A stretch of 64,000 nucleotides of DNA, taken from the IMG/VR virus record IMGVR_UViG_3300019458_000020, positions 1 to 64,000 of that record; one strand, given 5' to 3'. The position numbers and the translations under genes are program-made. Positions 6,336 through 24,800 of the stretch are shown here, one piece after another; the stretch's first letter is position 1; the number at the start of each line of letters is the position of its first letter. The notes beneath the pieces are model-generated. The model was not told the DNA's origin. It was given only the letters and a program-made list of their open reading frames with translations, and searched no databases.

Positions 6336-6402
6336 CCATCATACATATCATTTTAAATTCCGACCCACCAATAATAAAAATACGCTTGTATCATACAATT
6401 TC

Positions 6403-6410
6403 TATTTATT
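6403..6410 (+). promoter_or_regulatory. TATTTATW putative late promoter
   Basis: TATTTATT 5 nt before ATG 6416; the motif recurs before many genes in this window. Confidence 0.55.
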
Positions 6411-6415
6411 GCAAT

Positions 6416-6763: not shown

Positions 6764-6764
6764 T

Positions 6765-7321: not shown

Positions 7322-7322
7322 A

Positions 7323-7589
7323 TTATTCGTATTTCTTTGTTTCGCCTTGTTTGAAATTTTTGAACATGACTTTCCCTTCTGCGGCTAAAATCAACATTTC
7401 ATCCAGTTCTTGAATTAAATCATTCCTTTGTATATTCAAGATATTAGTTTTCCTCGTTGCATCAGCCACATCTTTGTCTGTCTTTGACTTATCTCTCTTC
7501 AATTCTTCGAGATGCCAAATTTTTAGGTTTACTATTCCGAGTTGGTCTATTAAATTCCCGAATGATACATTCATAGTTTTTCTTTCCAT
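7323..7589 (-). CDS. DUF4254-like helical protein
   Basis: GNLIDQL.I.NLKIWHLEE..R and N.QRNDLI.ELD pattern; this family is often found beside glycan genes. Confidence 0.6.
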   Translation of the reverse strand: MERKTMNVSFGNLIDQLGIVNLKIWHLEELKRDKSKTDKDVADATRKTNILNIQRNDLIQELDEMLILAAEGKVMFKNFKQGETKKYE

Positions 7590-7655
7590 ATACCGAAATA
7601 ATTTGTCTCGGAATATAATTTGTTATCTACTCTAAAAATCCCATATATTAATTTT

Positions 7656-8885: not shown

Positions 8886-8886
8886 A

Positions 8887-9738: not shown

Positions 9739-10598
9739 ACCAATCTCTCTAAGTAACTTTTATAATCACTTTTTGGTAGGCTTCCTACCGATTCCTTAAA
9801 TTGTTCTTTAGAAATGAAACCATTTACTAAACATGATTCTTCATAACATCCAATCATTATTCCCTGTCTTTCTTGGACAGATTGAATGTATGCTGATGCT
9901 TGAAATAATGTGGCTGGGGTACCGGCATCCAACCATGCTGTTCCTCTTTCCATAATTTTGGCTGTTAGTGTTCCTTCTTGCATATACATTTTTAACAAAT
10001 CCACTATTTCTAACTCCCCTCGTGTGGATGGCCTTAATGTATTAGCAAAATTAGAAGCCATTCCATCAAAATAATACAGACCCGGTATAGCATATTTACT
10101 CTTTGGTTGTATTGGTTTTTCTTCTAAAGAAATAACGTTACCCATTTTATCGAACTCAACTACACCATAAGCTCTTGGATTATTAACTTCGTATCCAAAC
10201 ACCGACGCTCCTTTTGGTGGAGTTATAACATATTTGTATTTATCAGGAGGTTGAATATTTCCATGAAATATGTTATCTCCGAGAATCAAACAGGAGGGTT
10301 TTTCTTCCAAGTAATCCTCAGCAATAATTAATGCCTGAGCTAATCCTTTTGGTTGGTCTTGAATCGCATATTGTATGCACAATCCCCATTTGTTTCCGTT
10401 TCCTAATAAGTTTTTGTAAAAATCAATGTATTGAGGGCTTGTTATCAATAATATCTCTTTTATTCCGTTATTGATTAAAGTGGTCAACGAATAATAGACC
10501 ATCGGTTTATCATATACAGGCAATAGTTGTTTATTAACCATTGTTGTCAATGGATATAATCGAGTTCCTGACCCACCTGATAAGATTATGCCTTTCAT
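9735..10598 (-). CDS. rmlA: Glucose-1-phosphate thymidylyltransferase
   Basis: KGIILSGGSGTRLYPLT, KQLLPVYDKPM, LILGDNIF, EEKP, RGELEI, WLDAGT. Confidence 0.95.
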   Translation of the reverse strand: MKGIILSGGSGTRLYPLTTMVNKQLLPVYDKPMVYYSLTTLINNGIKEILLITSPQYIDFYKNLLGNGNKWGLCIQYAIQDQPKGLAQALIIAEDYLEEKPSCLILGDNIFHGNIQPPDKYKYVITPPKGASVFGYEVNNPRAYGVVEFDKMGNVISLEEKPIQPKSKYAIPGLYYFDGMASNFANTLRPSTRGELEIVDLLKMYMQEGTLTAKIMERGTAWLDAGTPATLFQASAYIQSVQERQGIMIGCYEESCLVNGFISKEQFKESVGSLPKSDYKSYLERLV

Positions 10599-10850
10599 TT
10601 ATTTACTTTGATGATTTTGATTTAAATAATTAACAATTTCATTTACCAATTGATTACATCCTTCTTCGGATTCTAATAAAGCCAGATCGCCGTCGGTGAG
10701 GCCAAATACAAACACCTTTCCGAGAGTCCACACAGCAAGTTCAACATCTGTATCCTTACATGTAATAGAATGACTTCCAGTAAATGATTCCCCCATTGCT
10801 TTCAGGGGAAACGTTTCATTAAGTAGTTTGAATAGATGTCTGGTTTTCAT
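10599..10850 (-). CDS. Hypothetical protein
   Basis: 83-aa ORF abutting the rmlA start. Confidence 0.55.
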   Translation of the reverse strand: MKTRHLFKLLNETFPLKAMGESFTGSHSITCKDTDVELAVWTLGKVFVFGLTDGDLALLESEEGCNQLVNEIVNYLNQNHQSK

Positions 10851-11589
10851 TTTTGTTTAATCTTTCTTTCCAATTCCACACAAGAGGTTTTACAAACATT
10901 ATCTTTTGTGGTGATTTAGTTATTATGTATTCTTTTCCTTCGTCGTATCCATACTTCTCAAGAGCAGCTTTTGGGTCTTTTCTTGCTAATTCTCCCCTAG
11001 CTCCTGTTTCCTTTTTCCATAAACCCAATGGGCCTTTTCTAATAGAATTTCCTGATGTCTTTCCTACTTCTATCCAATTAGATGCACGGTATATCGCACC
11101 GTTTCTTAATTTCTCTCCATTATATTGTTCTACTCGTTCCGGTTGAACATAGGTTTCTATCATCAGTAACGGTTGATTATACTTCTCTTTCCATCTTTTT
11201 GCACCTTGTATGGATAATTGTTTTAAAACCATACTTCCGGTATTTTTTATGGTTATATTCTTTTGAATGAAACAACAACGAGAATTGTTTGCTAACATTC
11301 CTAAATTCTTGATTCTAGTTTCTTTATCCCATCCGATATAGTCATCTCGACAGGATATAGCAATAGTTGCAGAAGATAAGCCGATGGCTCCTATGTGATT
11401 ACCGGATTGAGTTTCGTAGATTAACCATCGTATGTTTCTGGTAGGGGAATCAGTATATTTTACGTAAGAATGGTATTTATCAATAGTTTCTCTGAATAAT
11501 TTGTTCTGTTCCGGAGAGGAACATTCTACTAAAAATACCGGCGTTTTTACAGTATCAGAGTAATCAAATATGGACAAAGAAAAAGACAT
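10819..11589 (-). CDS. DUF4338/DruA-like protein (Mom-like GNAT superfamily)
   Basis: YHSY, RNIRWLI, GAIGLSSA, RDDYIGWD, NNSR, W...Y....LMIETYV, GAIYRASNW..VG.T.G. Confidence 0.75.
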   Translation of the reverse strand: MSFSLSIFDYSDTVKTPVFLVECSSPEQNKLFRETIDKYHSYVKYTDSPTRNIRWLIYETQSGNHIGAIGLSSATIAISCRDDYIGWDKETRIKNLGMLANNSRCCFIQKNITIKNTGSMVLKQLSIQGAKRWKEKYNQPLLMIETYVQPERVEQYNGEKLRNGAIYRASNWIEVGKTSGNSIRKGPLGLWKKETGARGELARKDPKAALEKYGYDEGKEYIITKSPQKIMFVKPLVWNWKERLNKNENQTSIQTT

Positions 11590-11645
11590 ACATATAACCG
11601 TTTCTACGTTAATATGTATGTCCGAAAAACTAAAAACGTTTTATT

Positions 11646-12326
11646 TTAAACCGTAACTATTCCGCTATTTACTCTTAACATTGGGCATTTTGATAAACAA
11701 AGACGGGTGGTATCTATCATATATTGGTCTTTAGATATAGCTGCCAATTCAATAGAAGGGTCGCTCATACGAACATCTTCCCATTCTAATCTATAATCTG
11801 ATTTATATCTTACCAATGGGTCGTTCTTTGCTTCTTCTGCATTAGGGGCGTCATCAAATACTTGTTCTCCCATAAAACCTCTATGGAATTTAGAAAGGTG
11901 GAGAACCCAACCCTCCCAATTTTTATGAAGCCAATCTGCTTCATTTGGAAATCTTACATCCGAAACGAAAAATACCTTTTGAGATTTGGGGGAATCGTTC
12001 TGATGTTTTTTATATTCGGCCCTTAACACATCATCAACTTTCTTAATCCATATATCCGGGTCAACATTTTCTCTCATTCCACATCCTATCCACACCAAAC
12101 CCGGTCGAATGACTTTTTTCTCGTCAGTATTATCGGTAAAAGCCGAGATACCAAACAATTGTTGACAAACGGGGTCTGCTAATTTTTTTAATTCATCGGC
12201 AAAAGCAAGTTTTCTAACTTCATAACCTTCTTCCTGTAAAATTGATGATGCAATTTTACAAAAAGTATCCTTACCACATCTAGCATATCCAGAAATCCCT
12301 ATAACTGTAAAATTTTTGTTACTCAT
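11646..12326 (-). CDS. Deoxynucleoside monophosphate kinase (T4 gp1-like)
   Basis: GISGYARCGKDT P-loop, AFADELK, DIWIK, SDVRFPNEA. Confidence 0.85.
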   Translation of the reverse strand: MSNKNFTVIGISGYARCGKDTFCKIASSILQEEGYEVRKLAFADELKKLADPVCQQLFGISAFTDNTDEKKVIRPGLVWIGCGMRENVDPDIWIKKVDDVLRAEYKKHQNDSPKSQKVFFVSDVRFPNEADWLHKNWEGWVLHLSKFHRGFMGEQVFDDAPNAEEAKNDPLVRYKSDYRLEWEDVRMSDPSIELAAISKDQYMIDTTRLCLSKCPMLRVNSGIVTV

Positions 12327-12338
12327 AATAATTTCCTT

Positions 12339-12866
12339 TCAACTTTCTCCATTTAATAAAACATTTTCTATTTCTTTGTCGTTTAATCCATATCCTTGGC
12401 AAATATTAACCAATTCTTCCATTCCGCCTTCAAGATTTATTAACATAAATACATATTCATTCGCACGATCGACAGAAATATCAAATTTTTTAGAAACTAA
12501 ATTCAATAATTCTTTGTTAAACTTGTCTTTTTTCGATTTTACCCACGGATAAAATTTTCTATCAGGTTGAACCAATGTAATTAACAGTGTATAGAATTGT
12601 TCCGATGGAATAATATCGAAATATTTGAATAACCATGCCATATCTTCGATGTAATTTGGATTCATGGATATTGCTCTCAGAAGCATGAAGTGAGAAAAAT
12701 TCTTCTTATCGAATTCTGATAAATTTTTATAATAGTTCGGGTCTTGGATTTCCTTAATTTGTTTGACGTGTTCAAACAAACTCACGGGCTTAATCTTTTC
12801 CATCGACTGGTCTTCCGAATCTTGACAATCTTTCGATTTTTTGGGCTCTTTGAGCTTTCTTTTCAT
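12339..12866 (-). CDS. Clamp loader small subunit (T4 gp62-like), putative
   Basis: SLFEH...I, F..FML.R.ISM, QFY..L.......KFYPWVK.KK pattern. Alternative start at ATG 12803. Confidence 0.6.
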   Translation of the reverse strand: MKRKLKEPKKSKDCQDSEDQSMEKIKPVSLFEHVKQIKEIQDPNYYKNLSEFDKKNFSHFMLLRAISMNPNYIEDMAWLFKYFDIIPSEQFYTLLITLVQPDRKFYPWVKSKKDKFNKELLNLVSKKFDISVDRANEYVFMLINLEGGMEELVNICQGYGLNDKEIENVLLNGES

Positions 12867-13059
12867 ACAATGTTAATTTTGATAACAATCCTGCTTGTGT
12901 AGATTGTAATGTATTTTGGTTTTTTGATAGTATAACGACATTCTCTTCCGATTTAGTTACTCTATTTTTTAACCAACGATATCTTTTTTCACAAAAAACT
13001 ATATATCCTGATACCAAAGAAACCACCAACAGTATAATTAGATATGTTATTATAGACAT
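12790..13059 (-). CDS. Hypothetical membrane-anchored coiled-coil protein
   Basis: N-terminal hydrophobic helix followed by a heptad-like segment. Confidence 0.55.
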   Translation of the reverse strand: MSIITYLIILLVVSLVSGYIVFCEKRYRWLKNRVTKSEENVVILSKNQNTLQSTQAGLLSKLTLYEKKAQRAQKIERLSRFGRPVDGKD

Positions 13060-13103
13060 GATTATGATTATAATAGTTTATCGACAAACAATCTCAATAT
13101 TTT

Positions 13104-14312
13104 TTAACGTCCCACATCGTTAAAATATATCTGTCTAGCTTTTTCATAGGACATTCCACTCATATCTCCATAAAAGAGTTTCGTAGAGTTGAGCGGACCT
13201 GATGATTTTAATTTCTTATATCGTTCTATGGCTTTTGGTCGCCACCAATCCAATATGGCTTTTGTATCATACTGAAACAGTGGTTTCAAAATCAAATCCT
13301 TTTCTTCGATTTTATTTGATAGAAATTCTTTTGTGTTTTCGTAAAAACAAGAATAATATACACCCCGCTCAAATCCATGAACATAGTTAGATGATTTGAT
13401 TTGAGCAGAATCGAATATCATATTTATGACTCTTAATTTAGCTCCTGTAACAGGACCAGAAACATCTTCCTTCTGTGTCATCTTTTTCTCATATTCAGAT
13501 GATTTGTTTATCTTAATCCAATCATGCCACTTCTTATAAATTTTTTCTTCAGGTTGAATGGCAATCTTGCCGGCCGACGTTCCGCATTTATGCCACCATT
13601 TTAAACTATTATACATGGAGAATGAACCATAAAGGCTTGTCGTCGTCATTCCTACTAAAACAGAATCATACGTCCGTTTCCAAGCATCTCTGACTACTTT
13701 GGAAACTACCATTGCAGCGGATAACTTTCCTCCTAAGAATGGATAACCAAATGGTTGAGTAGAAACAATCGTTGTTCCAATTGCTGAATTAACTAATTTT
13801 CCTTCCTTGAGTTTATTATCCATTGACCATCCAATATAATTGTCTCTATCTCCAATGGAAATTACATCACTGGCAATTGAACATATTCCTAAGATTCTTG
13901 GATTATCAAGATTTCCATCATGGATCCAAAACTTCATAAATCTACCAGGTGCCTGATTAAATTCGGCAGAACTACAAAAATAACGAAGTGTGGTCCACAT
14001 TTTGTCATCTTCTTCGTTATCTATCAATTGAATTGTTGGAACCATGTTTTCAATTTCTTTTATGGTTCGTTCTTCATCCATGATATCTTCTGGTGCCCAT
14101 ATTTTTGCCTTGGCTACGCCAGCACGATTAAGGTGAGAATTCATAGCCTTTCTATCAGATATTTCTTCCCATTTTTTTCGAAAAGTAAATTCCTCAACAC
14201 TCAATGATTTAAGATAATCCATATTTTCTATCAACTTCCTTGTTTCTACATTAAGGTTAAATGAAGCTTGGGATGGTGCTGACTCAAAAAATATATCCGA
14301 TGTATCTGCCAT
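13104..14312 (-). CDS. DUF4338/DruA-like protein (long form)
   Basis: PGRFMKF, LGICSIASD, RDNYIGW, IVSTQPFG..FLGGKL, W...Y...LVGMTTTSLYG, W...G.SAG. Confidence 0.8.
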   Translation of the reverse strand: MADTSDIFFESAPSQASFNLNVETRKLIENMDYLKSLSVEEFTFRKKWEEISDRKAMNSHLNRAGVAKAKIWAPEDIMDEERTIKEIENMVPTIQLIDNEEDDKMWTTLRYFCSSAEFNQAPGRFMKFWIHDGNLDNPRILGICSIASDVISIGDRDNYIGWSMDNKLKEGKLVNSAIGTTIVSTQPFGYPFLGGKLSAAMVVSKVVRDAWKRTYDSVLVGMTTTSLYGSFSMYNSLKWWHKCGTSAGKIAIQPEEKIYKKWHDWIKINKSSEYEKKMTQKEDVSGPVTGAKLRVINMIFDSAQIKSSNYVHGFERGVYYSCFYENTKEFLSNKIEEKDLILKPLFQYDTKAILDWWRPKAIERYKKLKSSGPLNSTKLFYGDMSGMSYEKARQIYFNDVGR

Positions 14313-14317
14313 AAGGA

Positions 14318-14346
14318 ATTTTATCTCTATAAAAAGAGAAAGTCAA
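14318..14346 (-). promoter_or_regulatory. Sigma70-type promoter, probably giving a leaderless transcript
   Basis: TTGACT-17 nt-TAAAAT, then 5 nt to ATG 14312. Confidence 0.8.
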
Positions 14347-14356
14347 CATATCATAC

Positions 14357-14364
14357 TATTTATT
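14357..14364 (+). promoter_or_regulatory. TATTTATW putative late promoter
   Basis: TATTTATT 4 nt before ATG 14369. Confidence 0.55.
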
Positions 14365-14368
14365 ATAT

Positions 14369-14659
14369 ATGCAATTCAAAAAAATAAATCCGGCGATGTT
14401 GGTGTATCATTACTTTCAAAGATCGCCCAGTGAATTTGTTTTATTTGATGATGAAATGGATTTACCTATTATTTACGGTAGTCGAAATCTCGTCGATTCT
14501 ACCGTTAGGAAACTTTCCTCTTCTGTAACGATTATTTATTACAAAAGAGATAATTCTGAGAAGGCCGCATTTAAGAGAAACGTTATATACAAAGGTAAAA
14601 AACCAGAACCTTCACTGAAGCCAACCATTGAAGTTGAAAGGGTAAAACCTAGCCCTTAA
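14369..14659 (+). CDS. Hypothetical protein
   Basis: 96-aa ORF with an upstream TATTTATT motif. Confidence 0.6.
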   Translation: MQFKKINPAMLVYHYFQRSPSEFVLFDDEMDLPIIYGSRNLVDSTVRKLSSSVTIIYYKRDNSEKAAFKRNVIYKGKKPEPSLKPTIEVERVKPSP

Positions 14660-14823
14660 AGTTCTAACAAAATATCGAATTCACACTTACTGAATCGTTC
14701 TTCATCCATGAAAGCTATTTCCGTATCGATTTCATCTTCATCAAGACTTACTTTGACGACCTTCTTGGTTTTTAGATCGAAAACCCCACATATATGAACC
14801 GGTATTTTTTTTGATTTCGGCAT
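14656..14823 (-). CDS. Small hypothetical protein (55 aa, below the ORF-track cutoff)
   Basis: MPKSKKIPVHICGVFDLKTKKVVKVSLDEDEIDTEIAFMDEERFSKCEFDILLEL; fills the gap and shares a TTAA stop overlap with the convergent gene. Confidence 0.6.
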   Translation of the reverse strand: MPKSKKIPVHICGVFDLKTKKVVKVSLDEDEIDTEIAFMDEERFSKCEFDILLEL

Positions 14824-14855
14824 ATATGTGGGGAATTTTCGTTCACCGATGATTA

Positions 14856-15290
14856 TTACACGGTGACAGGCTTTGTGACGGAAACAACCGGCGTAGGAGT
14901 TGTTGGAGCCGGAGCCGGAGTCGAAACGGGGGCCACGGTCATAACATTGACGAGCTTCGTTTGGTCATCTAATTGAATTCCGGCAGACTTGGCAGAATCC
15001 AAAACCGATTGAAGAACGGGACGCATAGCGAACACCAAACAAGGACGGCCTTTGCCTGGATTGGTTGTGCCAATGACGCCGACCGTCTTTTCACTGTCGA
15101 TTGCCTTCTTTAGTCGAACACGAAGAGTAATCGGTACGAAATCAGGGTTTAAATTAAAAAGGTCTTTTATCGTAAAATAAACCGAAGCCGAAGGCCAGAC
15201 GACCGTGAGGTTCGTGTTATTTTTTCTTTGTGTCTTCTTCGTCGCGGGAGAAGACGTTACTGTGTTTGTTGTGTTTGTTGTATCATTCAT
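14856..15290 (-). CDS. Putative winged-helix DNA-binding protein with a Pro/Thr-rich tail
   Basis: FTIKDL...ITLRVRL.. helices followed by a GKGRP wing-like motif; has its own promoter. Confidence 0.5.
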   Translation of the reverse strand: MNDTTNTTNTVTSSPATKKTQRKNNTNLTVVWPSASVYFTIKDLFNLNPDFVPITLRVRLKKAIDSEKTVGVIGTTNPGKGRPCLVFAMRPVLQSVLDSAKSAGIQLDDQTKLVNVMTVAPVSTPAPAPTTPTPVVSVTKPVTV

Positions 15291-15339
15291 AATGTGTTTT
15301 TATACTTTTTCTGTATTCCTCCTGTGGAATTACAGGTTT

Positions 15340-15368
15340 ACTTTAACGTAAACAAATAAAATTGTCAA
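15340..15368 (-). promoter_or_regulatory. Sigma70-type promoter
   Basis: TTGACA-17 nt-TAAAGT upstream of 15290. Confidence 0.75.
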
Positions 15369-15378
15369 CCCATTTTTT

Positions 15379-17649
15379 TCATACCTTCTTTAAAAAAAGT
15401 CCGTTCATCGTTTTTGCAATCTGCCCAACCTGCGTAACATCAATCATACTAGCGTCTTTTCCATACATTGAACGGAATTGTTTTTCCGTTGTTTGGGTCG
15501 CCATTCCTAAAAATCCACCGAAAGCATTTACACTTTTATAATCCGATTCTATAAAATAACTCAGTATTTTAATACCATGTGACCGCATAATATTAACCTG
15601 ACGTTTGGTGTGTTTCACAGCTTCTTCACCACCATAAGAAAATCCTTTTCCACCGCCGCGGTCATAAAAACAATAACACGGTTCACCGTCTGAAATGTTT
15701 ACGAAGTAATGGTCTTCTCCATTGGATCGTTTATTTATTACACAATCCGTCATGATTGCTTCAAAGGCCAATCCTTCAGGAGTTGCACCACCAGCTTTCA
15801 AAAATGGAAAAATCTGGCGTATCTTACTTGGTTTATCAACTTCTGAATCATATATGATAACAATATATGGAAGACTTGCCTTATCCATATCATGTGTTGT
15901 ACGAAGAGAAACCGACACATGTAAATTTTGAATCATCGAACATGCTTGACACAATGCTGCCAACAGTGTCATCGTAGGCAACCATTTTGTACTACAATCC
16001 ATCGAACCACTGGCATCCACCGAAATATGAAGTTTGGCTGTATTAAACTGGTCCATCTGAATCTTATAAAAGAGATTTTCTACTCCTGCACCAAACTCCG
16101 CTATAATTCTTTTTTCTAATTTACCGGAAGAGCGTCTAATATATTTAATGATGTTGGTTTCATTTCTGATTTGAAGTTTTCTTCCCAATCTTTTACCCAT
16201 AGCAATACCCTTCATTATTGCTTCCAAATTTTCTTTATTAGGTTCAATTCCACCTAATGCTATTCCGGGAGATTCTTCATGTGTAGAAAGAGGAAAGATT
16301 TCCTTTCCAGAAAACAATAACGATTTTGTCAGATTTTTTACAACGATACAATCGACTTTTCTTATGACTCCTTCAGAATTTTCTGGACTAAAATGAGCAT
16401 GAGAAATATGAATTCCTGATTGTTCAACGATTTCTAAAATCTTAGCTCTTTCGGCCGTCAAGGTTTCCTTTACCGAATCAAAATCATTCATTAACATTTC
16501 TTTCGTCTGTTCAAAATGTTTTTGAATTTTATCTCGTTGTGATGGGGTGAATTCACTTAAATCACCACGAGGGTCATCTTCCGTAGTCTTACCATCTTCA
16601 ATTTTTTCGGCTTGAGTAGGCATGCCTCCCAATACGTCCTCAATTGATTCAGATTCCGACTCTGCCAACTTTTCTTTTTCAGATGATGGTTCACCGGTTT
16701 TTTCTTCTTTATTTTCGGAATGTTCTCCGGATTTGCTTATTTGTGTCGCGGACGGATCATCTTTATTCCCATCAGGTTCATTAGATGGTTCATTAGAATT
16801 ACCACTCAACACATTTTTTATCTGCTTAATTGTAGAATTGGCTCCACCACCGTTATTGGCTTCTTTTTTCTTTTTATCGATTGCATCTAATATCATTTCG
16901 ACAATTTTGAATGAGAGAGTCATTCTATCCGATGTAGTCTTTTCTCTTAAAATGGTTGATATATCGAATAAAGCATTTATCTTTCTTAATTCCGGCAAGG
17001 CATCTAAATCAGTCGCGGGATTGGTCAAATATATGATTCTATATTCGTAGGATTCCAAATTATTGAGACGATATCCCTTCGATTTAAGCGTTGCACTTAT
17101 TGCTTTGGAATTCCAAAGCTTATCATACAATGCTTTATAATATCCTCGGTATCCGGGACATGTTTTGAAGGCATAGGCATCAATATATCTGTCTTCGACA
17201 ACATTGAACATCATTTTACAAAAGTGAGCTACTTCTTCTTTTGTGACTCGCTTTTCTTTGCCCTTCTTATACAGTTCCGATGGAATCTTATTCCAAATAG
17301 ACCTAAATATATTAAAATCCGTTTTAACGATGTGCATTGATTCGTGTAATGCTAATCCGACACACCAATCAAAGTCGGATTTTTTTCTAACGGAAGCTGA
17401 CAAAAAAACAGTTTTTCCATCGGTTGCTCCGGTACTTCCGGCAGGTAAATATTTAACAGGTATGGATGGGTTTGTAGCAATGGATACAAAGTTAGAAATG
17501 ACTTTTCGATACGATGCCAATAAAATTAAATCCATTGTAAATAACTTACCCTCAGTTGTGGTTTCTTTATCATGATTTATATAATCATCGATAGACGTGC
17601 CGTCCAACCAGAAATCGGAATAACACGTATCTTTATCTACAACATCCAT
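15379..17649 (-). CDS. VWA-domain protein with N-terminal HExxH metallopeptidase-like domain (CobT-like MoxR partner)
   Basis: ATDGK, GLALHESMH, NVVEDRYID; acidic linker; MIDAS VDASGSM, GATPEG, ISDGEP. Confidence 0.85.
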   Translation of the reverse strand: MDVVDKDTCYSDFWLDGTSIDDYINHDKETTTEGKLFTMDLILLASYRKVISNFVSIATNPSIPVKYLPAGSTGATDGKTVFLSASVRKKSDFDWCVGLALHESMHIVKTDFNIFRSIWNKIPSELYKKGKEKRVTKEEVAHFCKMMFNVVEDRYIDAYAFKTCPGYRGYYKALYDKLWNSKAISATLKSKGYRLNNLESYEYRIIYLTNPATDLDALPELRKINALFDISTILREKTTSDRMTLSFKIVEMILDAIDKKKKEANNGGGANSTIKQIKNVLSGNSNEPSNEPDGNKDDPSATQISKSGEHSENKEEKTGEPSSEKEKLAESESESIEDVLGGMPTQAEKIEDGKTTEDDPRGDLSEFTPSQRDKIQKHFEQTKEMLMNDFDSVKETLTAERAKILEIVEQSGIHISHAHFSPENSEGVIRKVDCIVVKNLTKSLLFSGKEIFPLSTHEESPGIALGGIEPNKENLEAIMKGIAMGKRLGRKLQIRNETNIIKYIRRSSGKLEKRIIAEFGAGVENLFYKIQMDQFNTAKLHISVDASGSMDCSTKWLPTMTLLAALCQACSMIQNLHVSVSLRTTHDMDKASLPYIVIIYDSEVDKPSKIRQIFPFLKAGGATPEGLAFEAIMTDCVINKRSNGEDHYFVNISDGEPCYCFYDRGGGKGFSYGGEEAVKHTKRQVNIMRSHGIKILSYFIESDYKSVNAFGGFLGMATQTTEKQFRSMYGKDASMIDVTQVGQIAKTMNGLFLKKV

Positions 17650-17652
17650 AAT

Positions 17653-18627
17653 TTAGAATTTATGGGTTTTTAACCCTCCCTTTTTTCCCTTGATAGGATT
17701 AGGTGCGGCAGAAGCATTGGTATCAATATATTTCTGAACCAATTGTTTGATATAAAGTCTTTCGGATTCCGTTCCGCCATCTTTATCAAACATTGGATAG
17801 ATGGATAATTCTGCTAACTCTTTAAGAGAAAATCCGTCAATAACCATCTGAGCCATTTCAATAACAATACCGGTGGGAATGAATCGGGAAATAGGAGCGT
17901 CGTCTAATTTAGCCTGTTTCTTTGTATCATGTGAAATATTACAAATATCATTGAAGTAGTCCTTGTTTTCTTCAAAATCATTTTCAAATAAAATTTTCAA
18001 TAACTTCATCTCTCCGTCAAAATCCAACGGTTCCATTTCAACGATGACCGGAAATCGACGAGACGTGGCTTCATCGATGACTTTCGTTGCGGTATATTGT
18101 AATCCTATGTTTGTAGTAGAAACAAACGTAATACTGGTAGGAATCTTGATGATTGAGGATTCTACTGATTCATCCAACCGTAAATATCTTTGTGTAGAAT
18201 CCAAGACCGGCATCAATATATTCCAAGCATCATGATGTCCACGAGAAAGTTCATCTAGTAGAATTACTGCATTCTCAGTTTGTATTGCTCTAACAAATTC
18301 CGATGGATTAAATATCGTTCCTTGCTCTTTTTTGAATGTGGTATTTCCAATAAGTGTTGCCCGGGCATCTTGTGTAGAACCAAGATTGAAATAGAAGAAG
18401 GGTCTATTCAATGCTTTTGCGACGGATTGAGCGGCTTTGGTTTTTCCGCATCTTGTCGGTCCTACTATTAAAACGTTTCGACCTCGTAACACTGCCCATA
18501 CCAAACCCTTCCATTGTGTTTCGTCTATAATCAAATCCTTTGGAATTAAAGACTTGGAATCAGTAAGCATTTGCGTAACATCTACGTTTGACATATCGTT
18601 GAGAATGGAGTTTTTCATTACCTCCAT
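17653..18627 (-). CDS. MoxR/CobS-like AAA+ ATPase
   Basis: GPTRCGKT Walker A, ILLDELSR Walker B, TTN sensor, DEATSRRF arginine finger. The true start may be ATG 18618. Confidence 0.9.
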   Translation of the reverse strand: MEVMKNSILNDMSNVDVTQMLTDSKSLIPKDLIIDETQWKGLVWAVLRGRNVLIVGPTRCGKTKAAQSVAKALNRPFFYFNLGSTQDARATLIGNTTFKKEQGTIFNPSEFVRAIQTENAVILLDELSRGHHDAWNILMPVLDSTQRYLRLDESVESSIIKIPTSITFVSTTNIGLQYTATKVIDEATSRRFPVIVEMEPLDFDGEMKLLKILFENDFEENKDYFNDICNISHDTKKQAKLDDAPISRFIPTGIVIEMAQMVIDGFSLKELAELSIYPMFDKDGGTESERLYIKQLVQKYIDTNASAAPNPIKGKKGGLKTHKF

Positions 18628-18656
18628 ACTATTCCATACTTTTTATACAATGTCAA
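18628..18656 (-). promoter_or_regulatory. Sigma70-type promoter (weaker -10)
   Basis: TTGACA-17 nt-AATAGT directly after a terminator. Confidence 0.5.
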
Positions 18657-18688
18657 GAAAGAAAAAACGTGTTGTGAACCAACACGTT
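18657..18688 (-). terminator. Rho-independent terminator
   Basis: AACGTGTTG/CAACACGTT stem with a 5-nt loop, followed by a U-rich tract on the minus strand. Confidence 0.7.
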
Positions 18689-18705
18689 CTATATTAGAAA
18701 GCGAA

Positions 18706-19209
18706 TTAAGCTACCGGTGCAGTAGGGGCCGGTGGTGTTGCGGCTGCCGGTGCTGGTGTAGGTTCACCCGTAGGAATGGTATCGGATTCGTAACGAGCCA
18801 TTCTCTCAAGAATATTTTCAAGTTTTTCATATTCAGGAAACTCTGAAAATCTCGATTGAATTCCTTCTCCATTGTTTGCATTTTTTACTGTTCTAACAAA
18901 AATAACAGGCATCGTATGAGACGGAGAAAAATAAACACTTTCTACTACATCAATATCATTATCCGTAATATAATGTCTCGTGTATGCATGATGATTGGCA
19001 TCCCATTTGAATCCGAATAATTCCAATGAATCTAAGTGGAGTTGTTCTGTAGCCTGCTGACCATCGACGATTTGGGGGACAGGGAATTTCATTTTCATAA
19101 ATCCCAATTCCTTCAACGTCTCAATTTGGTCTTCGGTAAAAGCATCCATTCCTTTCAATACTTCACGAATGGTTTCTTTTATTAATGCTTTAATCTCATG
19201 TTTTTTCAT
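18706..19209 (-). CDS. Hypothetical protein with shared helical leader (putative internal head protein)
   Basis: N-terminus MKKHEIKALIKETIREVL. Confidence 0.65.
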   Translation of the reverse strand: MKKHEIKALIKETIREVLKGMDAFTEDQIETLKELGFMKMKFPVPQIVDGQQATEQLHLDSLELFGFKWDANHHAYTRHYITDNDIDVVESVYFSPSHTMPVIFVRTVKNANNGEGIQSRFSEFPEYEKLENILERMARYESDTIPTGEPTPAPAAATPPAPTAPVA

Positions 19210-19210
19210 A

Positions 19211-19477
19211 TTATTTCTTGAATCCTAATCCGGCCACGTCACCTATTCCAGCTATGAATTTTCCGATCTTATCACTCCAATTAGCATTTCGTGCAGACCT
19301 CCATCCGTGTTTAAATCCAGCTTTAAATTCTTCAGACATGTGTGAATAGTCTCCGGCTTCTCCCTTTAGATGGTCGTTCATTCCTTGTCTAAATCCTTTT
19401 TTGTATTCGTTGGATTTTCCAGATAAATCAGTAGTAATTATCTCTTTAATGACTTGTTTAAGTTCATCCCTCTTCAT
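19211..19477 (-). CDS. Hypothetical protein with shared helical leader
   Basis: N-terminus MKRDELKQVIKEII; two Y/F-x-x-G-F-x-x-G repeats. Confidence 0.65.
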   Translation of the reverse strand: MKRDELKQVIKEIITTDLSGKSNEYKKGFRQGMNDHLKGEAGDYSHMSEEFKAGFKHGWRSARNANWSDKIGKFIAGIGDVAGLGFKK

Positions 19478-19481
19478 ATCA

Positions 19482-20270
19482 TTATTTTAATTTAGGTGTT
19501 TTCTTAGGATTTACTACCAATTTTTTATCAACCTTATGTTTCAGAGGCTTGACTTTGTTCTCAGTTTCCTTGAAATCTCTTTGGTGCTTGATATCCTTTT
19601 CATCTACCGTTTTCATTGGTTGATTTGGCTGGTCTTCATCCTTTTTGACTGCCTTCTCATTGTAATCTTTTTCATCGTTTTTGGTGTCGCCGACTTCTTT
19701 TCTTTTTGGCTTATTATGTTGTGGCAAATCACTCTTGTCTGATTTATCTTCCAAATGGTTCATCGCCTTTTCTCTTGCTTGGTCCACCTTCGTATCCTCT
19801 ACATCTTGGAAATTAGCTTTTACAAAATTCTTTACTTGTTCCCACGTCAAGGCTATGGCACGAACTCGGTCATCGAGATTTACCATTGCTTCAATGTTGA
19901 ACATGTCTTCGGCAGTTTGAGAAATACGAACACGGAGTAGCGGCTTTGCATCTACATTTAAATCGTTATGGTCATCCCAATAAACCAAAAAATCTTTATC
20001 AATTTCTTTTACAATTTTACTAAGTTGATCCATCATTTCGGCTCTAGTTGCATCCAATCGTTCGTTACCCGTTTTCTTATATCCCTTATCGATGGTTTCT
20101 TTTTCTTCTTTGGTTGGTTCGGGTTTTGTTACGTTGGTTATTTCAGATAAAACCTTCTTGACAATTTTTCGTAACGACTCCTTGACAACTTGTTTTTTAG
20201 ACGTGGCTCTCTCGGTTAGGACTTCATCCCAAGATTCTCTTACAAGTTTTTTTAATTGGTCTTTATTCAT
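19482..20270 (-). CDS. Hypothetical charged protein with two leader-like helices
   Basis: MNKDQLKKLVRESWDEVLTE and VKESLRKIVKKVLSE; K/D/E-rich tail. Confidence 0.7.
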   Translation of the reverse strand: MNKDQLKKLVRESWDEVLTERATSKKQVVKESLRKIVKKVLSEITNVTKPEPTKEEKETIDKGYKKTGNERLDATRAEMMDQLSKIVKEIDKDFLVYWDDHNDLNVDAKPLLRVRISQTAEDMFNIEAMVNLDDRVRAIALTWEQVKNFVKANFQDVEDTKVDQAREKAMNHLEDKSDKSDLPQHNKPKRKEVGDTKNDEKDYNEKAVKKDEDQPNQPMKTVDEKDIKHQRDFKETENKVKPLKHKVDKKLVVNPKKTPKLK

Positions 20271-20288
20271 ATTTATCTCCGATATGAG

Positions 20289-20296
20289 TATAAATA
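20289..20296 (-). promoter_or_regulatory. TATTTATA putative late promoter
   Basis: 18 nt upstream of ATG 20270. Confidence 0.6.
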
Positions 20297-20304
20297 TTAC
20301 AAAG

Positions 20305-21078
20305 TCAACTAAAAAACGGATTTTCGGTCTTATTATCGACTTTGATTTCCTCTATTTGTTCCTTATAGATAGTATCTTTTGGATAGGGTAAAAATGGGTG
20401 TTTTAGATTGGCTAATATTTTCTTCTTTTCGACCTTATTTCCCAATAAATACACATATCGATGTTTGGTGGATTCTTTTTTCCTCCAGAACGTTTTACCG
20501 ATGGTCTTTTTCAAATGTTCTACGTTATGAGAACCATAAGTGGAAAAGGCGGTTCTTGAATGCATCCATTTATACGGTGGCCCGATTTCTGAAATAGAAT
20601 AATTAGGCATTAAAGCTAATGAAGAATTCCCTTGATAGTAAAATCCTGAAGCCTGATAGATGGTTCCTCTGTGACCTTGTTCATTATCAGCATAACTTAT
20701 TACGGCTTTAACGTTAGGAAGATGCTTTGTCAACATCGATAAAGTCTTTGATATACAATAACTTTCTATATTTTTGCCGTATCCATCATAAATGACTAAT
20801 CGGGTTAATTCCGTAACTTGTTCCAAGGTTATGAGTGGAGATATAGATTCGGCTGCACTTCTTCCAACCGGGCCGCCGTAGATGACTGTTCCGATTAATT
20901 TTTCCTCATTGCCTTCAATGAATTGGGAGGGAGTTTTTGTATTAATGAAGATACCAAAAGCCACATCACATAGGGTCCATTTGTGACTATAATGATTTTT
21001 TTCGACAAATGATTTACCTATATCTTTAGGAATTACCCGTATTGACACGAGTGATGTATCGACATAACCTTCTTCCAT
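20305..21078 (-). CDS. Mom-family adenine-modification-like GNAT protein
   Basis: FVEKNHYSH, LIG..IYG.P, ELTRL, ESYCISK, VISYAD..QGHRGTIYQASGF.Y.G, KHRYVY. Confidence 0.85.
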   Translation of the reverse strand: MEEGYVDTSLVSIRVIPKDIGKSFVEKNHYSHKWTLCDVAFGIFINTKTPSQFIEGNEEKLIGTVIYGGPVGRSAAESISPLITLEQVTELTRLVIYDGYGKNIESYCISKTLSMLTKHLPNVKAVISYADNEQGHRGTIYQASGFYYQGNSSLALMPNYSISEIGPPYKWMHSRTAFSTYGSHNVEHLKKTIGKTFWRKKESTKHRYVYLLGNKVEKKKILANLKHPFLPYPKDTIYKEQIEEIKVDNKTENPFFS

Positions 21079-21833: not shown

Positions 21834-24800
21834 TTAAGATTTTGGTTTGATTTCGCAAACATCATTGCTGCAAAACCTTTCTACGTCCGCTTCTTCGTGT
21901 TTTATTCCTTTAAACCTCACAGGTTTTAATTTAGAGGATAGTTCATCGTAAGTTTCAATAGAAATGGTTTCGTAGGGCATCTGTTCGTATGCACCCTTTT
22001 CTGTAATAGGCAAAAATGAAATACCTTTTAGTTGATATTGATAGAAATTTAAAAGATGTTTGATTTGGTTCGCTTCATCCTTTCTAAAAGAAATGGTACA
22101 TGAAACTTGATTGTCTGCCCAATATCTTTGTAAGAACGCTGCCAGTGCAGCTTGTTCCCATATACTTACATCTTTAACTGGTCTTAGATTATCACCAATC
22201 TTGACAGGAATTTCTACAACAACAGTGGTATCTTCCGACCCCTTACAATCTTCGATGTGATATCCGGCTTCTTTTAATGGTCCAACTAAATCACTATATT
22301 TTGAAAGTCGCATTCTCCTTATGTAACAAACATTTTCTGGAAAATGAACGCCGGGGGTCGCACCGGCGACCAAACTCACCGTTCCACTTGGTTTGATAGA
22401 AGTCTTCTTTATACTTTTTGGTATGGCTAACCAATCGGAATATACTTCATCATAATACTCAATTTTTTTGTATCCCTTTTCGCACCATGTTTTAAATTCG
22501 TCTATTCCACGGTTAGCTAAAAATTGAACTATACCACTCATACTACAACCTATTCTTCTATTTCTTAACATTACTCTATTAGTTTCCGGCCAATGAGTTT
22601 GACCCAACGTCACTGTCTTGGCATACAAATATGCATATTTAAGTGTAACGAGAAAATCATCAAGATTTTCATGATTATTTGGGAATGTTTCAACTAAGCA
22701 GCATAATTCATAGCTTTCCAATGATTGTTCGAGACAATTGATTATTATAATCCCATCTACTTGATTATCAGAAACTTGTGTAATAATTGAATAATTATAA
22801 TTATCATCTACTGTAATGTTATATACATCTTCTTTTTCTGATAAAAATGTCACCGATTTAACTCGATGATTGTATCCTTTTTCTTTTTCAATTAATTCTT
22901 TGTAGCTTTTTAGAACGTAAGGATTTTCGGTTTTAAGAGATTCTGGATTTCTTATTCTAAAAGAAATTTTTCTATTTCGGCATTCTCTTTCCCATTCTTT
23001 CTTTAAAGGATTCCTATCCAAAGATTGTTTCAAGTCTTTGAATATCATAATTTGTTGATGTAATGTGTCTCTTTGTTTATTCTCAAAGTGGATCTTCTGC
23101 CCCTCTTTTCTAAATTTGATTTGTCCTTCGTGTTTATTTTGACATGAATGTGAACAAAATACAACATGGCGACTTCCCCAAGATACTATCATTTCATCAT
23201 TACATGTAATACATTTCTTCTTTGCAAACATTCGTTCGTTTACCCAAACTGTTTCTAAATCTGTCTTTTTTGATTGTTCTATATAGTATTCTTTATCCCA
23301 TTCTTTTTTATTTTTTTTCATTTTTGATGAATATAGTTCTCTACATTCGTCAGTATGAGAATTGGACAATCTTTTTAAATACTCTACATCTTTGCATCTT
23401 TCTTTCGTTTTTTCTCCAATTAATTTTTTCGATTCTTCCGTATGTTGTCTTCCAAACATAGGATTGTTTTCTCCTTGATTATCGTGGTCAGCATGAAATT
23501 TACAATGATCCTTAAATGTCATTAATTCTAGGTTATCTATAGAATTATTTAATCCATTATAATCTTTGTGATGAACAACTATTCCACCTTTACACCACCC
23601 ATTTGATTTCGATTCATTATATAGTTCGTTCCATTTTTCTGGATTGTGAAATTTAACAATTAAACGATGTTCCATTTCTCTTTTCCTTTTTACATCATTT
23701 GTATCCATGCTTACAATATAATATTTATTAGGATTATCCTTAAACATCTTTTCTTTTCTTTTTTGAAATCTTGGAAGAGAGTCTCCAATTTTTAAATCTT
23801 TAGCACGACACGTTTCTCCATTTAATAAAATCATTTTGTGGTCTGGAGTGACTCTTAATTTTCCTCCTTCTTCAAATTCTATTTCTACCAATTCTGCATT
23901 TTCTCTAGTCTTTCTTGGATTTCTTCCCCACTTTATTTCTACCATTCCACTTTTATTCATAGAATATACTGCAACATCATTTCCTTCTTCTGCTAATTCT
24001 TTTATAGAAACTGCATTTCTTCCGTCTGCAACTGCAATGAGAGTGTCTCCGGTTAAACAAGGATTACCCCCTTCAACCCGATGGTCTTTGTGGTCCATTC
24101 CATTATTCATCCTTGAATATCCTTTCATATTTTCCAACCAAGCATATCCCGGCTCACCATTTACTTTAGTTCTCTCGGCAGCATTGGAATAATCCATTCC
24201 CAAATCACAAAAGATAGAATTGTTTGATGTCCATCCATATTCAGACCGATGTGGATTCTTTTTATAATTTTTTAAATCCAAATATTCTTCTGAGTTGTAG
24301 TCACCAAATACAATTTCAGCCGTTCTTCTTACATTTCCAGCAACAACACACTTTCCAATAAGATTCATAACATCAACAATAGTAGTTGTTGTTATTAGGT
24401 GTCCTACATTTTTATCAAAAATTACACGAAGGGTTTTATGAAGTTCAATCAAGGGTTGAGAACCGGATGAAACACCACCGAACCCTTTAATTGGTTCGCC
24501 CGCGGCTCTTATTAATGAATAATCGAAATGAACTTCCTTGGTTTCAAGTAGATAGGATTCGATTAAAAGTTTTGTTGATTCGACCCAACCCTCTCTCGTA
24601 TCAGCAATTTTATAAATATTGTCGGGTGATGGGCTTGGTTTCCCTACTTTAATTTTCCCTGACCCTTTACAATCAAATCCAACACCAACACCCAACATTG
24701 ACATATCCATCAAAAAACAGAATGATTTTGACACATCCTCTTTTATGGTTGAGGTCGAAACGAATGCACAGTTATTTAGTGCGGCATATAAATGTCTTTC

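What the first reader, a model, noticed from the sequence alone, without database searches (positions are those of the whole stretch)
10819..21078. Three Mom/DruA-type GNAT-fold genes within 10 kb, next to a dNMP kinase and a clamp loader subunit
Seen: two distinct DUF4338/DruA-like genes (10819..11589, 13104..14312; both with RD.YIGW) and a Mom-like gene (20305..21078). The short DruA-like and Mom-like proteins share G.IY.AS.[WF]...G. Established: Mu Mom converts adenine to N6-(1-acetamido)adenine. DruA is a function-unknown component of the Druantia anti-phage system. No Druantia helicase is present here. Inference: a multi-enzyme DNA hypermodification or counter-defence module, with the phage using DruA-like proteins as modifiers or decoys. 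The short copy is co-oriented with and almost adjacent to rmlA, so a link to sugar donors is possible.
Basis: partly seen in the sequence, partly recalled or inferred. Interest (0 to 1): 0.75.

Follow-up and report, generated by a model that had tools for sequence, protein, structure and literature searches.

The report
Three Mom-related GNAT genes, one phage
A large uncultured T4-like phage carries, inside its DNA-replication gene block, one classical Mom DNA-modification gene and two distant relatives of it, one of which matches the function-unknown DruA protein of the bacterial Druantia defence; they most likely mark the phage's DNA against host nucleases, which makes DruA's function testable.

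Summary
ORFs 10819-11589 and 13104-14312 hit Pfam DruA (E 5e-25 and 2e-19). ORF 20305-21078 hits Pfam Mom (E 5e-43). A T4 gp1-type dNMP kinase and a gp62-type clamp-loader subunit lie between the two DruA-like genes.

Both DruA-like proteins model confidently (pLDDT 88) as GNAT folds, and phage Mu Mom (8bv8) is the best PDB match for each. They belong to two different subfamilies:
- The short protein is homologous to Mom over its whole length (hhalign E 6e-10). It keeps Mom's His, essential Arg and Ser, and Tyr.
- The long protein shares its motifs with genuine Druantia type I DruA. It lacks that Arg and Ser.

All three genes recur in the same order in a clade of uncultured large phages. The long type also sits between the clamp-loader genes gp44 and gp62 of the two marine cyanophages examined. 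No Druantia helicase is present. The proposed sugar link is not supported.

My best reading is three separate nucleic-acid-modifying enzymes expressed with the replication genes, not one pathway. The chemistry is inferred, not shown. The GNAT fold and the Mom likeness of DUF4338 were already in the literature. New here: the conserved trio, the split into two subfamilies, and the testable idea that DruA writes a non-methyl adenine mark.

The parts
20305..21078 (-). Mom-like GNAT (257 aa), a classical Mom-family member
   Evidence: Pfam Mom E 4.6e-43. PHROG Mom-like E 1.6e-46. phmmer to Mu Mom 8bv8, E 2.8e-6. Alignment with Mu Mom and 12 others keeps H29/Y30, R93, S106, D131, Y141 (Mu H58/Y59, R111, S124, D149, Y159); Mu R151 corresponds to E133 here. 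pI 9.1.
13104..14312 (-). Long DruA-type protein (402 aa): N-terminal helical region, GNAT core (about 87-334) with a helical insertion (about 252-310), and a C-terminal helical region. It belongs to the 'DruA proper' subfamily.
   Evidence: Pfam DruA E 2.2e-19. PADLOC DruA model PDLC00002, E 5.9e-18, residues 117-366 against profile 117-375 of 407. Model pLDDT 88.3. Best PDB match is Mu Mom: Foldseek E 2.7e-3, probability 1.0; VIA Z 10.0 over 184 residues. Shares RD..IGW, LGGKL, TTS, S.YN.LK with DruA of two complete Druantia I loci. T181 and G195 stand where Mom has its Arg and Ser.
10819..11589 (-). Short DUF4338 protein (256 aa), the 'Mom-proximal' subfamily: a GNAT core with a basic helical insertion (about 186-229) before the last strand
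   Evidence: Pfam DruA E 5.1e-25. C-terminal residues 162-247 hit PHROG Mom-like, E 3.1e-5. hhalign against a diverse Mom alignment: probability 96.6, E 5.9e-10, 198 columns. Model pLDDT 88. Best PDB match is Mu Mom: Foldseek E 4.9e-7; VIA Z 14.3 over 184 residues. H40, R104, S119, Y167 align with Mu H58, R111, S124, Y159; Q149 stands at the D149 position. pI 9.5.
11646..12326 (-). T4 gp1-type dNMP kinase-like gene, directly upstream of the short gene
   Evidence: PHROG 139, E 1.2e-24. P-loop GYARCGKDT. This position is conserved in relatives, where the gene is sometimes replaced by a dGTP_diPhyd_N-domain gene.
12339..12866 (-). Clamp-loader small subunit (gp62-like)
   Evidence: PHROG 225, E 1.8e-11; Pfam Phage_clamp_A 22 bits, below cut-off. 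The order long-DruA then gp62 is the same as in cyanophages S-CAM9 and S-SCSM2R.
14318..14346 (-). Sigma-70-like promoter match (TTGACT, 17 nt, TAAAAT) directly upstream of the long gene
   Evidence: 10 of 12 consensus positions. It is one of five such top-scoring minus-strand matches that all lie in intergenic gaps ahead of genes. Overall the count of matches is not above chance, so this is weak evidence.
15379..18627 (-). AAA_5/CobS-like ATPase (17653-18627) and a 756-aa partner (15379-17649), conserved between the Mom-like and long genes
   Evidence: Pfam AAA_5 E 6.6e-16. PHROG 249, E 8.5e-18. The pair is found in most relatives whose fetched stretch covers that region. Its relation to the GNAT genes is unknown.

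Best explanation
The phage carries three separate enzymes of the Mom branch of the GNAT superfamily. They are transcribed with its T4-like replication genes, and each most likely puts a covalent group on DNA bases of the newly made phage genome.

1. The Mom-like protein (20305-21078) most likely works like Mu Mom. It would take glycine from host Gly-tRNA(Gly) and transfer it to N6 of adenine in double-stranded DNA, where it rearranges to carbamoylmethyl-adenine.

2. The short protein (10819-11589) keeps the Mom fold, the basic helical insertion that is essential in Mu Mom and proposed there to bind DNA, and Mom's signature Arg and Ser. I infer the same type of acyl or aminoacyl transfer onto nucleic acid, with another donor, base or sequence context. 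It is always found next to gp62 and a nucleotide-metabolism gene.

3. The long protein (13104-14312) is the phage counterpart of genuine Druantia type I DruA. It has the Mom-like fold but different residues at the catalytic Arg and Ser positions. I infer that it writes, or binds, the same mark that DruA makes in bacteria carrying Druantia type I. It would then be an orphan 'self-mark' enzyme, used the way phages use orphan methyltransferases.

Shown here: family membership, folds, residue conservation and gene order. Inferred: donors, targets and any protective effect.
For: Family and residues of the Mom-like gene. The mechanism of Mu Mom, the essential R111 and S124, and the essential insertion are from PMC13219725.

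Short protein:
- hhalign to Mom, E 5.9e-10 over the whole length.
- Mu Mom is its top structural match, covering 184 residues against about 140 for other GNATs.
- In 145 representative DUF4338 proteins the His is present in all that have a residue there. The Arg is present in 128 of 131, the Ser in 123 of 131, and the Tyr in 127 of 129. An acidic residue stands at the D149 position in 91 of 130.
- In the protein-language-model search, 74 of its 100 nearest clusters are Mom and 24 are DruA.

Long protein:
- Full-length match to the PADLOC DruA model.
- Shared motifs with DruA from two loci that carry DruA to DruE.
- Mu Mom is its top structural match.
- Homology to the short family, E 2.1e-21.

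Context:
- All three proteins are basic (pI 8.6-9.5) and have basic insertions, while their neighbours are acidic.
- Of 28 viral loci with about 10 kb upstream of the short gene, 24 have the long gene upstream and 18 also have the Mom gene. In two of the rest that I checked, Mom lies just beyond 10 kb.
- In the two cyanophages examined, the long type sits between gp44 and gp62.
- DruA domains elsewhere are fused to DDE transposases, to ParB_N and to DndF, all DNA-handling contexts.
- A preprint reports a PacBio 'm6A' signal at CAGCTGNC only when Druantia type I is expressed, although that system has no methylase domain (10.1101/2024.04.14.589459). Naming DruA as the writer of that signal is my inference.
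Against: - No chemistry was tested and no read-level modification data were available.
- The long protein and genuine DruA lack the Arg and Ser that are essential in Mu Mom. Its direct profile comparison with Mom is not significant (E 0.086). It may therefore use other chemistry or be non-catalytic.
- The short protein has Gln where Mu Mom has D149.
- Mu R151, essential in Mu, is Glu in the window's Mom-like protein and is not conserved across the family.
- No tRNA-Gly is among the 41 tRNA genes of the held record. This is only a weak point, because Mu uses host tRNA.
- The three genes are not one operon and occur separately in other phages, so a joint function is not shown.
- Pelagiphages carry the long type. 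From my own knowledge, untested here, their SAR11 hosts are poor in defence systems, which argues against a role limited to Druantia evasion.
Confidence: 0.5

Rival explanations
1. The long DruA-type protein, and possibly the short one, is not an enzyme. It would be a DNA-binding factor or a decoy subunit that takes DruA's place in a host Druantia type I complex, or covers the sites that complex reads, and so blocks the defence.
For: The long type and genuine DruA lack Mom's essential Arg and Ser. It resembles DruA over its full length. It is basic, with extra helical regions at both ends. No other Druantia gene is present in the phage.
Against: The long family keeps a tight set of invariant Gly, Arg, Gln, Lys, Ser and Tyr residues from this clade to cyanophages, and mostly to bacterial DruA (QP.G, GGK, TTS, S.Y). 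That pattern is typical of an active site. The gene holds a fixed place in the replication block of many phages, including pelagiphages, which suggests a general role rather than a host-specific counter-measure. The short protein keeps the catalytic set.
Confidence: 0.17
2. The DruA-like proteins are acyltransferases with targets other than DNA. Candidates are charged tRNA (as with the TacT and AtaT toxins), replisome or host proteins, nucleotides, or the nucleotide-sugars made by the neighbouring island.
For: GNATs have very diverse substrates, and fold does not predict substrate (PMC13219725). In the window the short gene is packed tightly with a small ORF, rmlA, an rmlD-like gene and a C-methyltransferase (gaps of -32, 0, -4 and 1 nt). 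It always follows a nucleotide-metabolism gene. Kre33/NAT10-type RNA acetyltransferases are among the structural matches of the long model.
Against: The best sequence and structure relative of both proteins is the DNA-modifying Mom, including its nucleic-acid-binding insertion. The tight packing with sugar genes is not conserved: L004 has opposite-strand ORFs downstream, and several relatives show no detectable sugar gene within 10 kb. The domain's other contexts (transposases, ParB, DndF, Druantia) are all DNA-centred.
Confidence: 0.2
3. The three genes are steps of a single hypermodification pathway that builds one complex base.
For: They co-occur in the same order in most members of the clade. 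A dNMP kinase lies among them.
Against: All three are the same kind of enzyme (transferase folds), not successive activities. Each occurs without the others in other phages. Mu Mom needs no partner enzyme (PMC13219725). No thymidylate-synthase-type hydroxymethylase or ThyX is in the held 250 kb.
Confidence: 0.08

Closest known systems
Phage Mu Mom (PDB 8bv8; Pfam PF25680)
   Same: The Mom-like gene is a family member well above the Pfam cut-off and keeps H58/Y59, R111, S124, D149 and Y159. The short and long proteins share the fold and an insertion before the last strand. Mom is the top PDB match for both.
   Different: The window's Mom-like protein is only 24% identical to Mu Mom, lacks R151 (Glu here) and has no com-like regulator gene next to it. 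It sits among early or replication genes, whereas Mu expresses mom late. The short protein is below detection for Pfam Mom and has Gln at the D149 position. The long protein lacks the Arg and Ser and adds helical regions at both ends.
DruA of Druantia type I (for example Ralstonia pUW163a and P. putida pKF715A; Pfam PF14236, PADLOC PDLC00002)
   Same: The long protein matches it in size (402 against 409-413 aa), in full-length HMM match and in the motif set RD..IGW, P..N..LGGKL, TTS..G, S.YN.LK and G.T.G.
   Different: Identity is about 21%. The phage has no DruB, DruC, DruD or DruE; the gene lies between replication genes. The short protein matches the DruA models only in its N-terminal part.
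DUF4338 genes of Kyanoviridae (Pelagibacter phages Mosig and HTVC008M; Synechococcus phages S-CAM9 and S-SCSM2R, whose ORF152 is annotated 'methylcarbamoylase mom')
   Same: They are homologues of the long protein (25-32% identity). In the two cyanophages the gene occupies the same place upstream of gp62 in the replication block.
   Different: In the regions I examined, those phages show the long gene without a short or Mom-like neighbour. The S-SCSM2R annotation as Mom rests on predicted structure; the catalytic Arg and Ser of Mom are absent from this subfamily.
tRNA-using GNATs (FemX, TacT/AtaT, L/F-transferase)
   Same: GNAT fold, with charged tRNA as donor or target. This is the mechanistic class to which Mom now belongs.
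   Different: No specific sequence relationship was found here. Their targets are peptidoglycan precursors, tRNA or proteins, not DNA.

Membership tests
Mom family (PF25680) | Profile HMM score above the curated cut-off | tested here: met
   This applies to 20305-21078 only: 147.7 bits against 27.1. The short and long proteins give no Pfam Mom hit. The short one hits PHROG Mom-like at E 3.1e-5 over residues 162-247.
Mom family (PF25680) | Mom-specific catalytic Arg (Mu R111) and Ser (Mu S124), both essential in Mu | tested here: met
   Mom-like: R93 and S106. Short: R104 and S119 by hhalign, conserved in 128/131 and 123/131 representatives. Long: NOT met; T181 and G195 stand at those positions. 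The same holds in genuine DruA.
Mom family (PF25680) | Acidic residue at Mu D149 | tested here: inconclusive
   Mom-like: D131, met. Short: Q149; the wider DUF4338 family has D or E in 91/130. Long: Leu at that position by the shallow A1-A2 profile alignment.
Mom family (PF25680) | GNAT fold with an extra helical (HTH-like) insertion between the last two core strands, essential in Mu | tested here: met
   Short model: helices 188-213 between strands 181-185 and 230-235. Long model: helices 256-302 between strands 241-251 and 311-322. Mom aligns over 184 residues with each.
Mom family (PF25680) | Gly-tRNA(Gly) as donor and N6 of adenine in dsDNA as acceptor | not testable with these tools
   This needs biochemistry or nucleoside mass spectrometry.
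DruA / DUF4338 (PF14236) | Profile HMM score above the curated cut-off | tested here: met
   Short 88.7 bits, long 70.2 bits, cut-off 27. Both were recovered again in the whole-record search.
Druantia type I defence system | DruA accompanied by DruB, DruC, DruD and the large DruE helicase (DUF1998/MZB) | tested here: not met
   No MZB/DUF1998 domain in the 250-kb record. The neighbours are replication and nucleotide genes. Genuine loci, for comparison, show DruA to DruE in a row.
T4 gp1-type dNMP kinase | Family profile match and a GKD-type P-loop | tested here: met
   PHROG 139, E 1.2e-24. GYARCGKDT at residues 13-21. The Pfam DNMK hit is below cut-off (19.4 against 27.1 bits). That gp1 has this type of P-loop is from my own memory, not a tool result.
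T4 gp62-type clamp-loader subunit | Family profile match and a position in the clamp/clamp-loader gene block | tested here: inconclusive
   PHROG 225, E 1.8e-11. Pfam Phage_clamp_A gives 22 bits, below the cut-off of 27. The order relative to the long gene is the same as for annotated gp62 in cyanophages.

The most novel reading that the evidence does not exclude
DruA proper would be a sequence-specific writer of a non-methyl (acyl or aminoacyl-derived) mark on adenine N6. That mark would be the unexplained 'm6A-like' self-mark of Druantia type I. T4-like phages of aquatic and cave habitats would have captured DruA as an orphan marker, built into their replication module. This phage clade, with three Mom-superfamily writers, would then carry up to three different non-methyl base marks on one genome.
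Probability: 0.2. Interest if true: 0.85.

Novelty: new variant of a known kind. Interest (0 to 1): 0.6.

Why it matters
No function for DruA has been reported in the papers I could search. The one study that looked found an adenine modification signal in a Druantia type I strain but no methylase to explain it.

This work shows three things that turn that puzzle into a direct experiment:
- DruA proper has the Mom fold.
- A sister subfamily keeps Mom's catalytic residues.
- Phages carry both, together with a true Mom, in their replication block.

The experiment is to delete or express DruA and look for a non-methyl adenine adduct.

The result also suggests that tRNA-dependent or related base acylation of DNA may be much more widespread than the Mom family itself. 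The profile search found 2,734 DUF4338 representatives, including many fused to transposases. It also warns against annotating the cyanophage DUF4338 genes simply as 'Mom'.

Tried and rejected
- Megablast of 10-22 kb against GenBank phages: no match. tblastn of the short protein against phages: no match.
- BLASTP between the three proteins: only short versus long is detectable (E 3e-7).
- hhalign with shallow clade-only alignments (Neff about 2) gave no significant DruA-Mom link. It became significant only with diverse alignments. Long versus Mom stayed non-significant, so that link rests on transitivity and structure.
- phmmer and hmmsearch of the DruA-likes against PDB sequences: nothing.
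- T4 late-promoter motif TATAAATA: more frequent than in shuffles across the window, but not placed upstream of these minus-strand genes.
- Sigma-70 scan: overall not above chance.
- Pre-replicative pyrimidine pathway: no ThyA-type or ThyX gene in the record.
- Phage tRNA-Gly to feed Mom: none among the 41 tRNAs.
- The 756-aa protein against the pelagiphage 'peptidase': no significant similarity.
- The genome-contig scan with long-type patterns found only metagenome-assembled contigs (apart from one single-cell assembly) and no cultured isolate.
I rebuilt it without them.
- Read laying was not used. The only runs holding the stretch are kept as assembled contigs from a cave metagenome, and these carry no modification information.

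Full report
**What the window is.** The window is the first 64 kb of a 250,813-bp linear IMG/VR virus record, estimated 74% complete. The same genome was also seen as a 340,916-bp contig. GC content is about 34%.

It encodes T4-like replication and recombination genes: a gp32-like protein, a RecA/UvsX-like protein, a DnaB-like helicase, a 5'-3' exonuclease and a class II ribonucleotide reductase with an intein. A large nucleotide-sugar and glycosyltransferase island lies at 167-10598. The only public runs that hold the stretch are labelled cave metagenome. No GenBank phage is close at the DNA level.

**The observation.** All three ORFs exist exactly as described, on the minus strand.
- 10819-11589 (256 aa) and 13104-14312 (402 aa) pass the Pfam DruA/DUF4338 cut-off (E 5.1e-25 and 2.2e-19).
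- 20305-21078 (257 aa) passes the Pfam Mom cut-off (E 4.6e-43).
- Between the two DruA-like genes lie a gp62-type clamp-loader subunit and a dNMP-kinase-like gene with the P-loop GYARCGKDT.
- The held record has no further copy of either family and no DUF1998/MZB helicase domain.

**Folds.** AlphaFold2 models built on diverse alignments are confident: the short protein has pLDDT 88.0 and pTM 0.81, and the long protein has pLDDT 88.3 and pTM 0.83.
- For the short model, the best of 350,542 PDB chains is the crystal structure of Mu Mom (8bv8): Foldseek E 4.9e-7; VIA-align Z 14.3 over 184 residues. Ordinary GNATs follow at Z 12.8 or less with about 140 residues aligned.
- For the long model, Mom is again first: Foldseek E 2.7e-3, probability 1.0; Z 10.0 over 184 residues, model residues 87-334. 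GNATs follow at Z about 9.
- Both models have a helical insertion between the last two core strands. That is where Mu Mom has its essential HTH-like insertion (PMC13219725).

**Sequence relationships.**
- With diverse alignments, the short family aligns with the Mom family (which includes Mu Mom) over its whole length: hhalign probability 96.6%, E 5.9e-10, 198 columns.
- The long and short families are clearly related: probability 99.4%, E 2.1e-21, 219 columns.
- Long versus Mom directly is not significant (E 0.086).
- Shallow, clade-only alignments miss the DruA-Mom link.
- In a protein-language-model search, the 100 nearest clusters of the short protein are 74 Mom and 24 DruA clusters.

**Two subfamilies hide under 'DruA'.** I mapped residues through these alignments.
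- The short protein keeps H40, R104, S119 and Y167. These correspond to Mu H58, R111, S124 and Y159.
- R111 and S124 are essential in Mu, and the Arg is a Mom signature absent from other GNATs (PMC13219725; PMC7261163).
- In 145 representative DUF4338 proteins the Arg is present in 128 of 131, the Ser in 123 of 131, the Tyr in 127 of 129, and the His in all that have a residue there. An acidic residue stands at the D149 position in 91 of 130. The window's short protein has Gln there.
- The long protein has T181 and G195 at the Arg and Ser positions. It has its own invariant set: RD..IGW, TQP.G, GGKL, TTSLYG and S.Y.
- I fetched two complete Druantia type I loci, in which DruA is followed by three genes and an approximately 1,850-aa helicase, from Ralstonia plasmid pUW163a and Pseudomonas putida plasmid pKF715A. 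Their DruA proteins share the long type's motif set and also lack the Mom Arg and Ser.
- The PADLOC DruA model matches the long protein over its full length (E 5.9e-18) but only the N-terminal part of the short one (E 1.7e-6).

The long gene is therefore the true DruA counterpart. The short gene belongs to a Mom-proximal branch, which also includes domains fused to Tn5, IS4, IS66, ISAs1 and IS701 transposases.

**The Mom-like gene.** I aligned it with Mu Mom and with phage homologues from Polaribacter, Bacillus, Microbacterium, Listeria and Elizabethkingia. It keeps every family-invariant residue, including those for Mu H58/Y59, R111, S124, D149 and Y159. Mu R151, essential in Mu, is not conserved in the family; it is Glu here, and most members have a His three positions later. 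Its nearest GenBank relative is Polaribacter phage P12002L at 42% identity.

**Conservation and gene order.** Each gene has hundreds of metagenomic homologues: 267, 1,184 and 549 proteins at E of 0.001 or better. They lie on contigs of up to 365 kb.
- Relatives at about 60% identity show the same order: Mom, AAA_5/CobS-like ATPase, a protein of about 755 aa, long DruA, gp62, a dNMP kinase or dGTP_diPhyd_N gene, short DruA, then a sugar island.
- Among 47 IMG/VR loci that hold the short gene, 28 have about 10 kb of upstream sequence. Of these, 24 have the long gene upstream on the same strand and 18 also have the Mom gene.
- In two of the six 'long only' cases, a search of the whole record found Mom about 10.2 kb away, just outside the fetched flank.
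- More distant phages (43-53% identity) carry only the short gene in the stretch or record held. There it still directly follows gp62 and the dNMP-kinase-like gene.
- The long type also occurs in Kyanoviridae: Pelagibacter phages Mosig and HTVC008M and many Synechococcus phages. In S-CAM9 and S-SCSM2R it sits between the clamp-loader genes gp44 and gp62, upstream of regA and the DNA polymerase gene. In the two pelagiphages it lies next to the CobS/'peptidase' pair.
- S-SCSM2R ORF152 was already annotated 'methylcarbamoylase mom' from predicted structure (PMC12801897). DUF4338 was already called a GNAT domain (PMC10853773).

**The sugar link.** In the window, the short gene, an 83-aa ORF, rmlA, an rmlD-like gene and a C-methyltransferase are packed with gaps of -32 to +1 nt. 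This packing is not conserved. In L004 two opposite-strand ORFs follow the short gene. The content of the island differs between relatives, and in several no sugar gene is detectable within 10 kb (my reference set was limited). I read the island as a variable region that abuts the replication block.

**How it most likely works.** Mu Mom transfers glycine from Gly-tRNA(Gly) to N6 of adenine in dsDNA. The glycyl group then rearranges on the base to carbamoylmethyl, which blocks many restriction enzymes (PMC13219725).
- The Mom-like gene most likely does the same, or something very close. I put this at about 0.7.
- The short protein keeps the fold, the basic insertion and the signature Arg and Ser. 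I infer an acyl or aminoacyl transfer onto nucleic acid with a different specificity, at about 0.5.
- For the long protein the inference is weaker, about 0.35. The fold and the DNA-centred contexts of the domain point to DNA: Druantia, ParB_N fusions in viruses, DndF fusions and transposase fusions.
- A preprint found a PacBio 'm6A' signal at CAGCTGNC only in cells expressing Druantia type I, which has no methylase domain (10.1101/2024.04.14.589459). A bulky N6-adenine adduct written by DruA would explain that result. Linking the two is my inference.
- All three proteins are basic (pI 8.6-9.5), unlike their neighbours.
- The five best minus-strand sigma-70-like matches all lie in intergenic gaps ahead of genes in this block, including the long gene. 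The scan as a whole is not above chance.

**What remains open.** Nothing here shows that the phage DNA is modified. The donors and targets are unknown. It is also unknown whether the long type is catalytic, since it lacks Mom's Arg and Ser. The three genes may act independently: each occurs alone elsewhere, and Mom needs no partner. The record has neither a thymidylate-synthase-type hydroxymethylase nor a tRNA-Gly gene, so I found no sign of a pre-replicative pathway or of a dedicated donor supply.

**Verdict.**
- The Mom-like gene is an ordinary new member of a known family.
- The GNAT nature of DUF4338 and its likeness to Mom were already noted in the literature.
- New here are the conserved trio, the split of 'DruA' into a Mom-proximal branch and a DruA-proper branch, the fixed place of both in T4-like replication blocks, and a concrete, testable function for DruA.
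- Scores: interest 0.6; novelty 'new variant of a known kind'.

Noticed in passing
G000:C1:160230-224528 (outside the window): There are 41 tRNA genes and a tmRNA-like gene (197242-197649). One tRNA has anticodon CUA (194949-195024), a possible amber suppressor. No tRNA-Gly, His, Asp or Tyr is in the held 250 kb.
   Followed up: partly
window 21834-25133 (-): A class II (B12-dependent) ribonucleotide reductase is interrupted by an intein that carries HNH and NUMOD3 endonuclease motifs.
   Followed up: no
window 167-10598: A large nucleotide-sugar and glycosyltransferase island: GT2, GT11, methyltransferases, a 4,6-dehydratase, a sugar C-methyltransferase, an RmlD-like gene and RmlA. Its gene content differs strongly between otherwise syntenic relatives.
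   Followed up: partly
window 15379-18627 (-): An AAA_5/CobS-like ATPase and a 756-aa protein with an acidic linker form a pair found in most relatives whose fetched stretch covers that region. This recalls the CobS plus 'peptidase' pair next to the DUF4338 gene in Pelagibacter phages. Only the ATPases are detectably similar (E 5e-6).
   Followed up: partly
L017:507-1240 (Microbacterium phage Blett): The Mom-like 'acetyltransferase' gene overlaps a ParB-like nuclease-domain gene and directly abuts a tRNA-Gly(ccc) gene. This fits the Gly-tRNA donor of Mom.
   Followed up: no
L020:359-2650; atlas clusters: DUF4338/DruA domains are fused to Tn5/IS4, IS66, ISAs1, IS701 and ISAZ013-type DDE transposases in bacteria. 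In viruses they are fused to ParB_N (644-aa proteins).
   Followed up: partly
G001:C1:249295-249690 (279-kb relative holding L064): A second, partial Mom-domain match (profile positions 4-132, E 4e-25) lies inside a 404-aa ORF, far from the main block.
   Followed up: no
window 11646-12326 versus L004:9578-9997 and L007:9530-9943: The slot between gp62 and the short gene holds a dNMP-kinase-like gene in some relatives and a dGTP_diPhyd_N-domain gene in others.
   Followed up: partly
window 14369-14659 (+): A 96-aa plus-strand ORF with no family match lies in the 343-nt gap upstream of the long gene. It is the only opposite-strand ORF in a gap between genes of this block, and an ORF in a similar position and orientation appears in relatives (L004:6721-7233, L007:6565-6825).
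   Followed up: no
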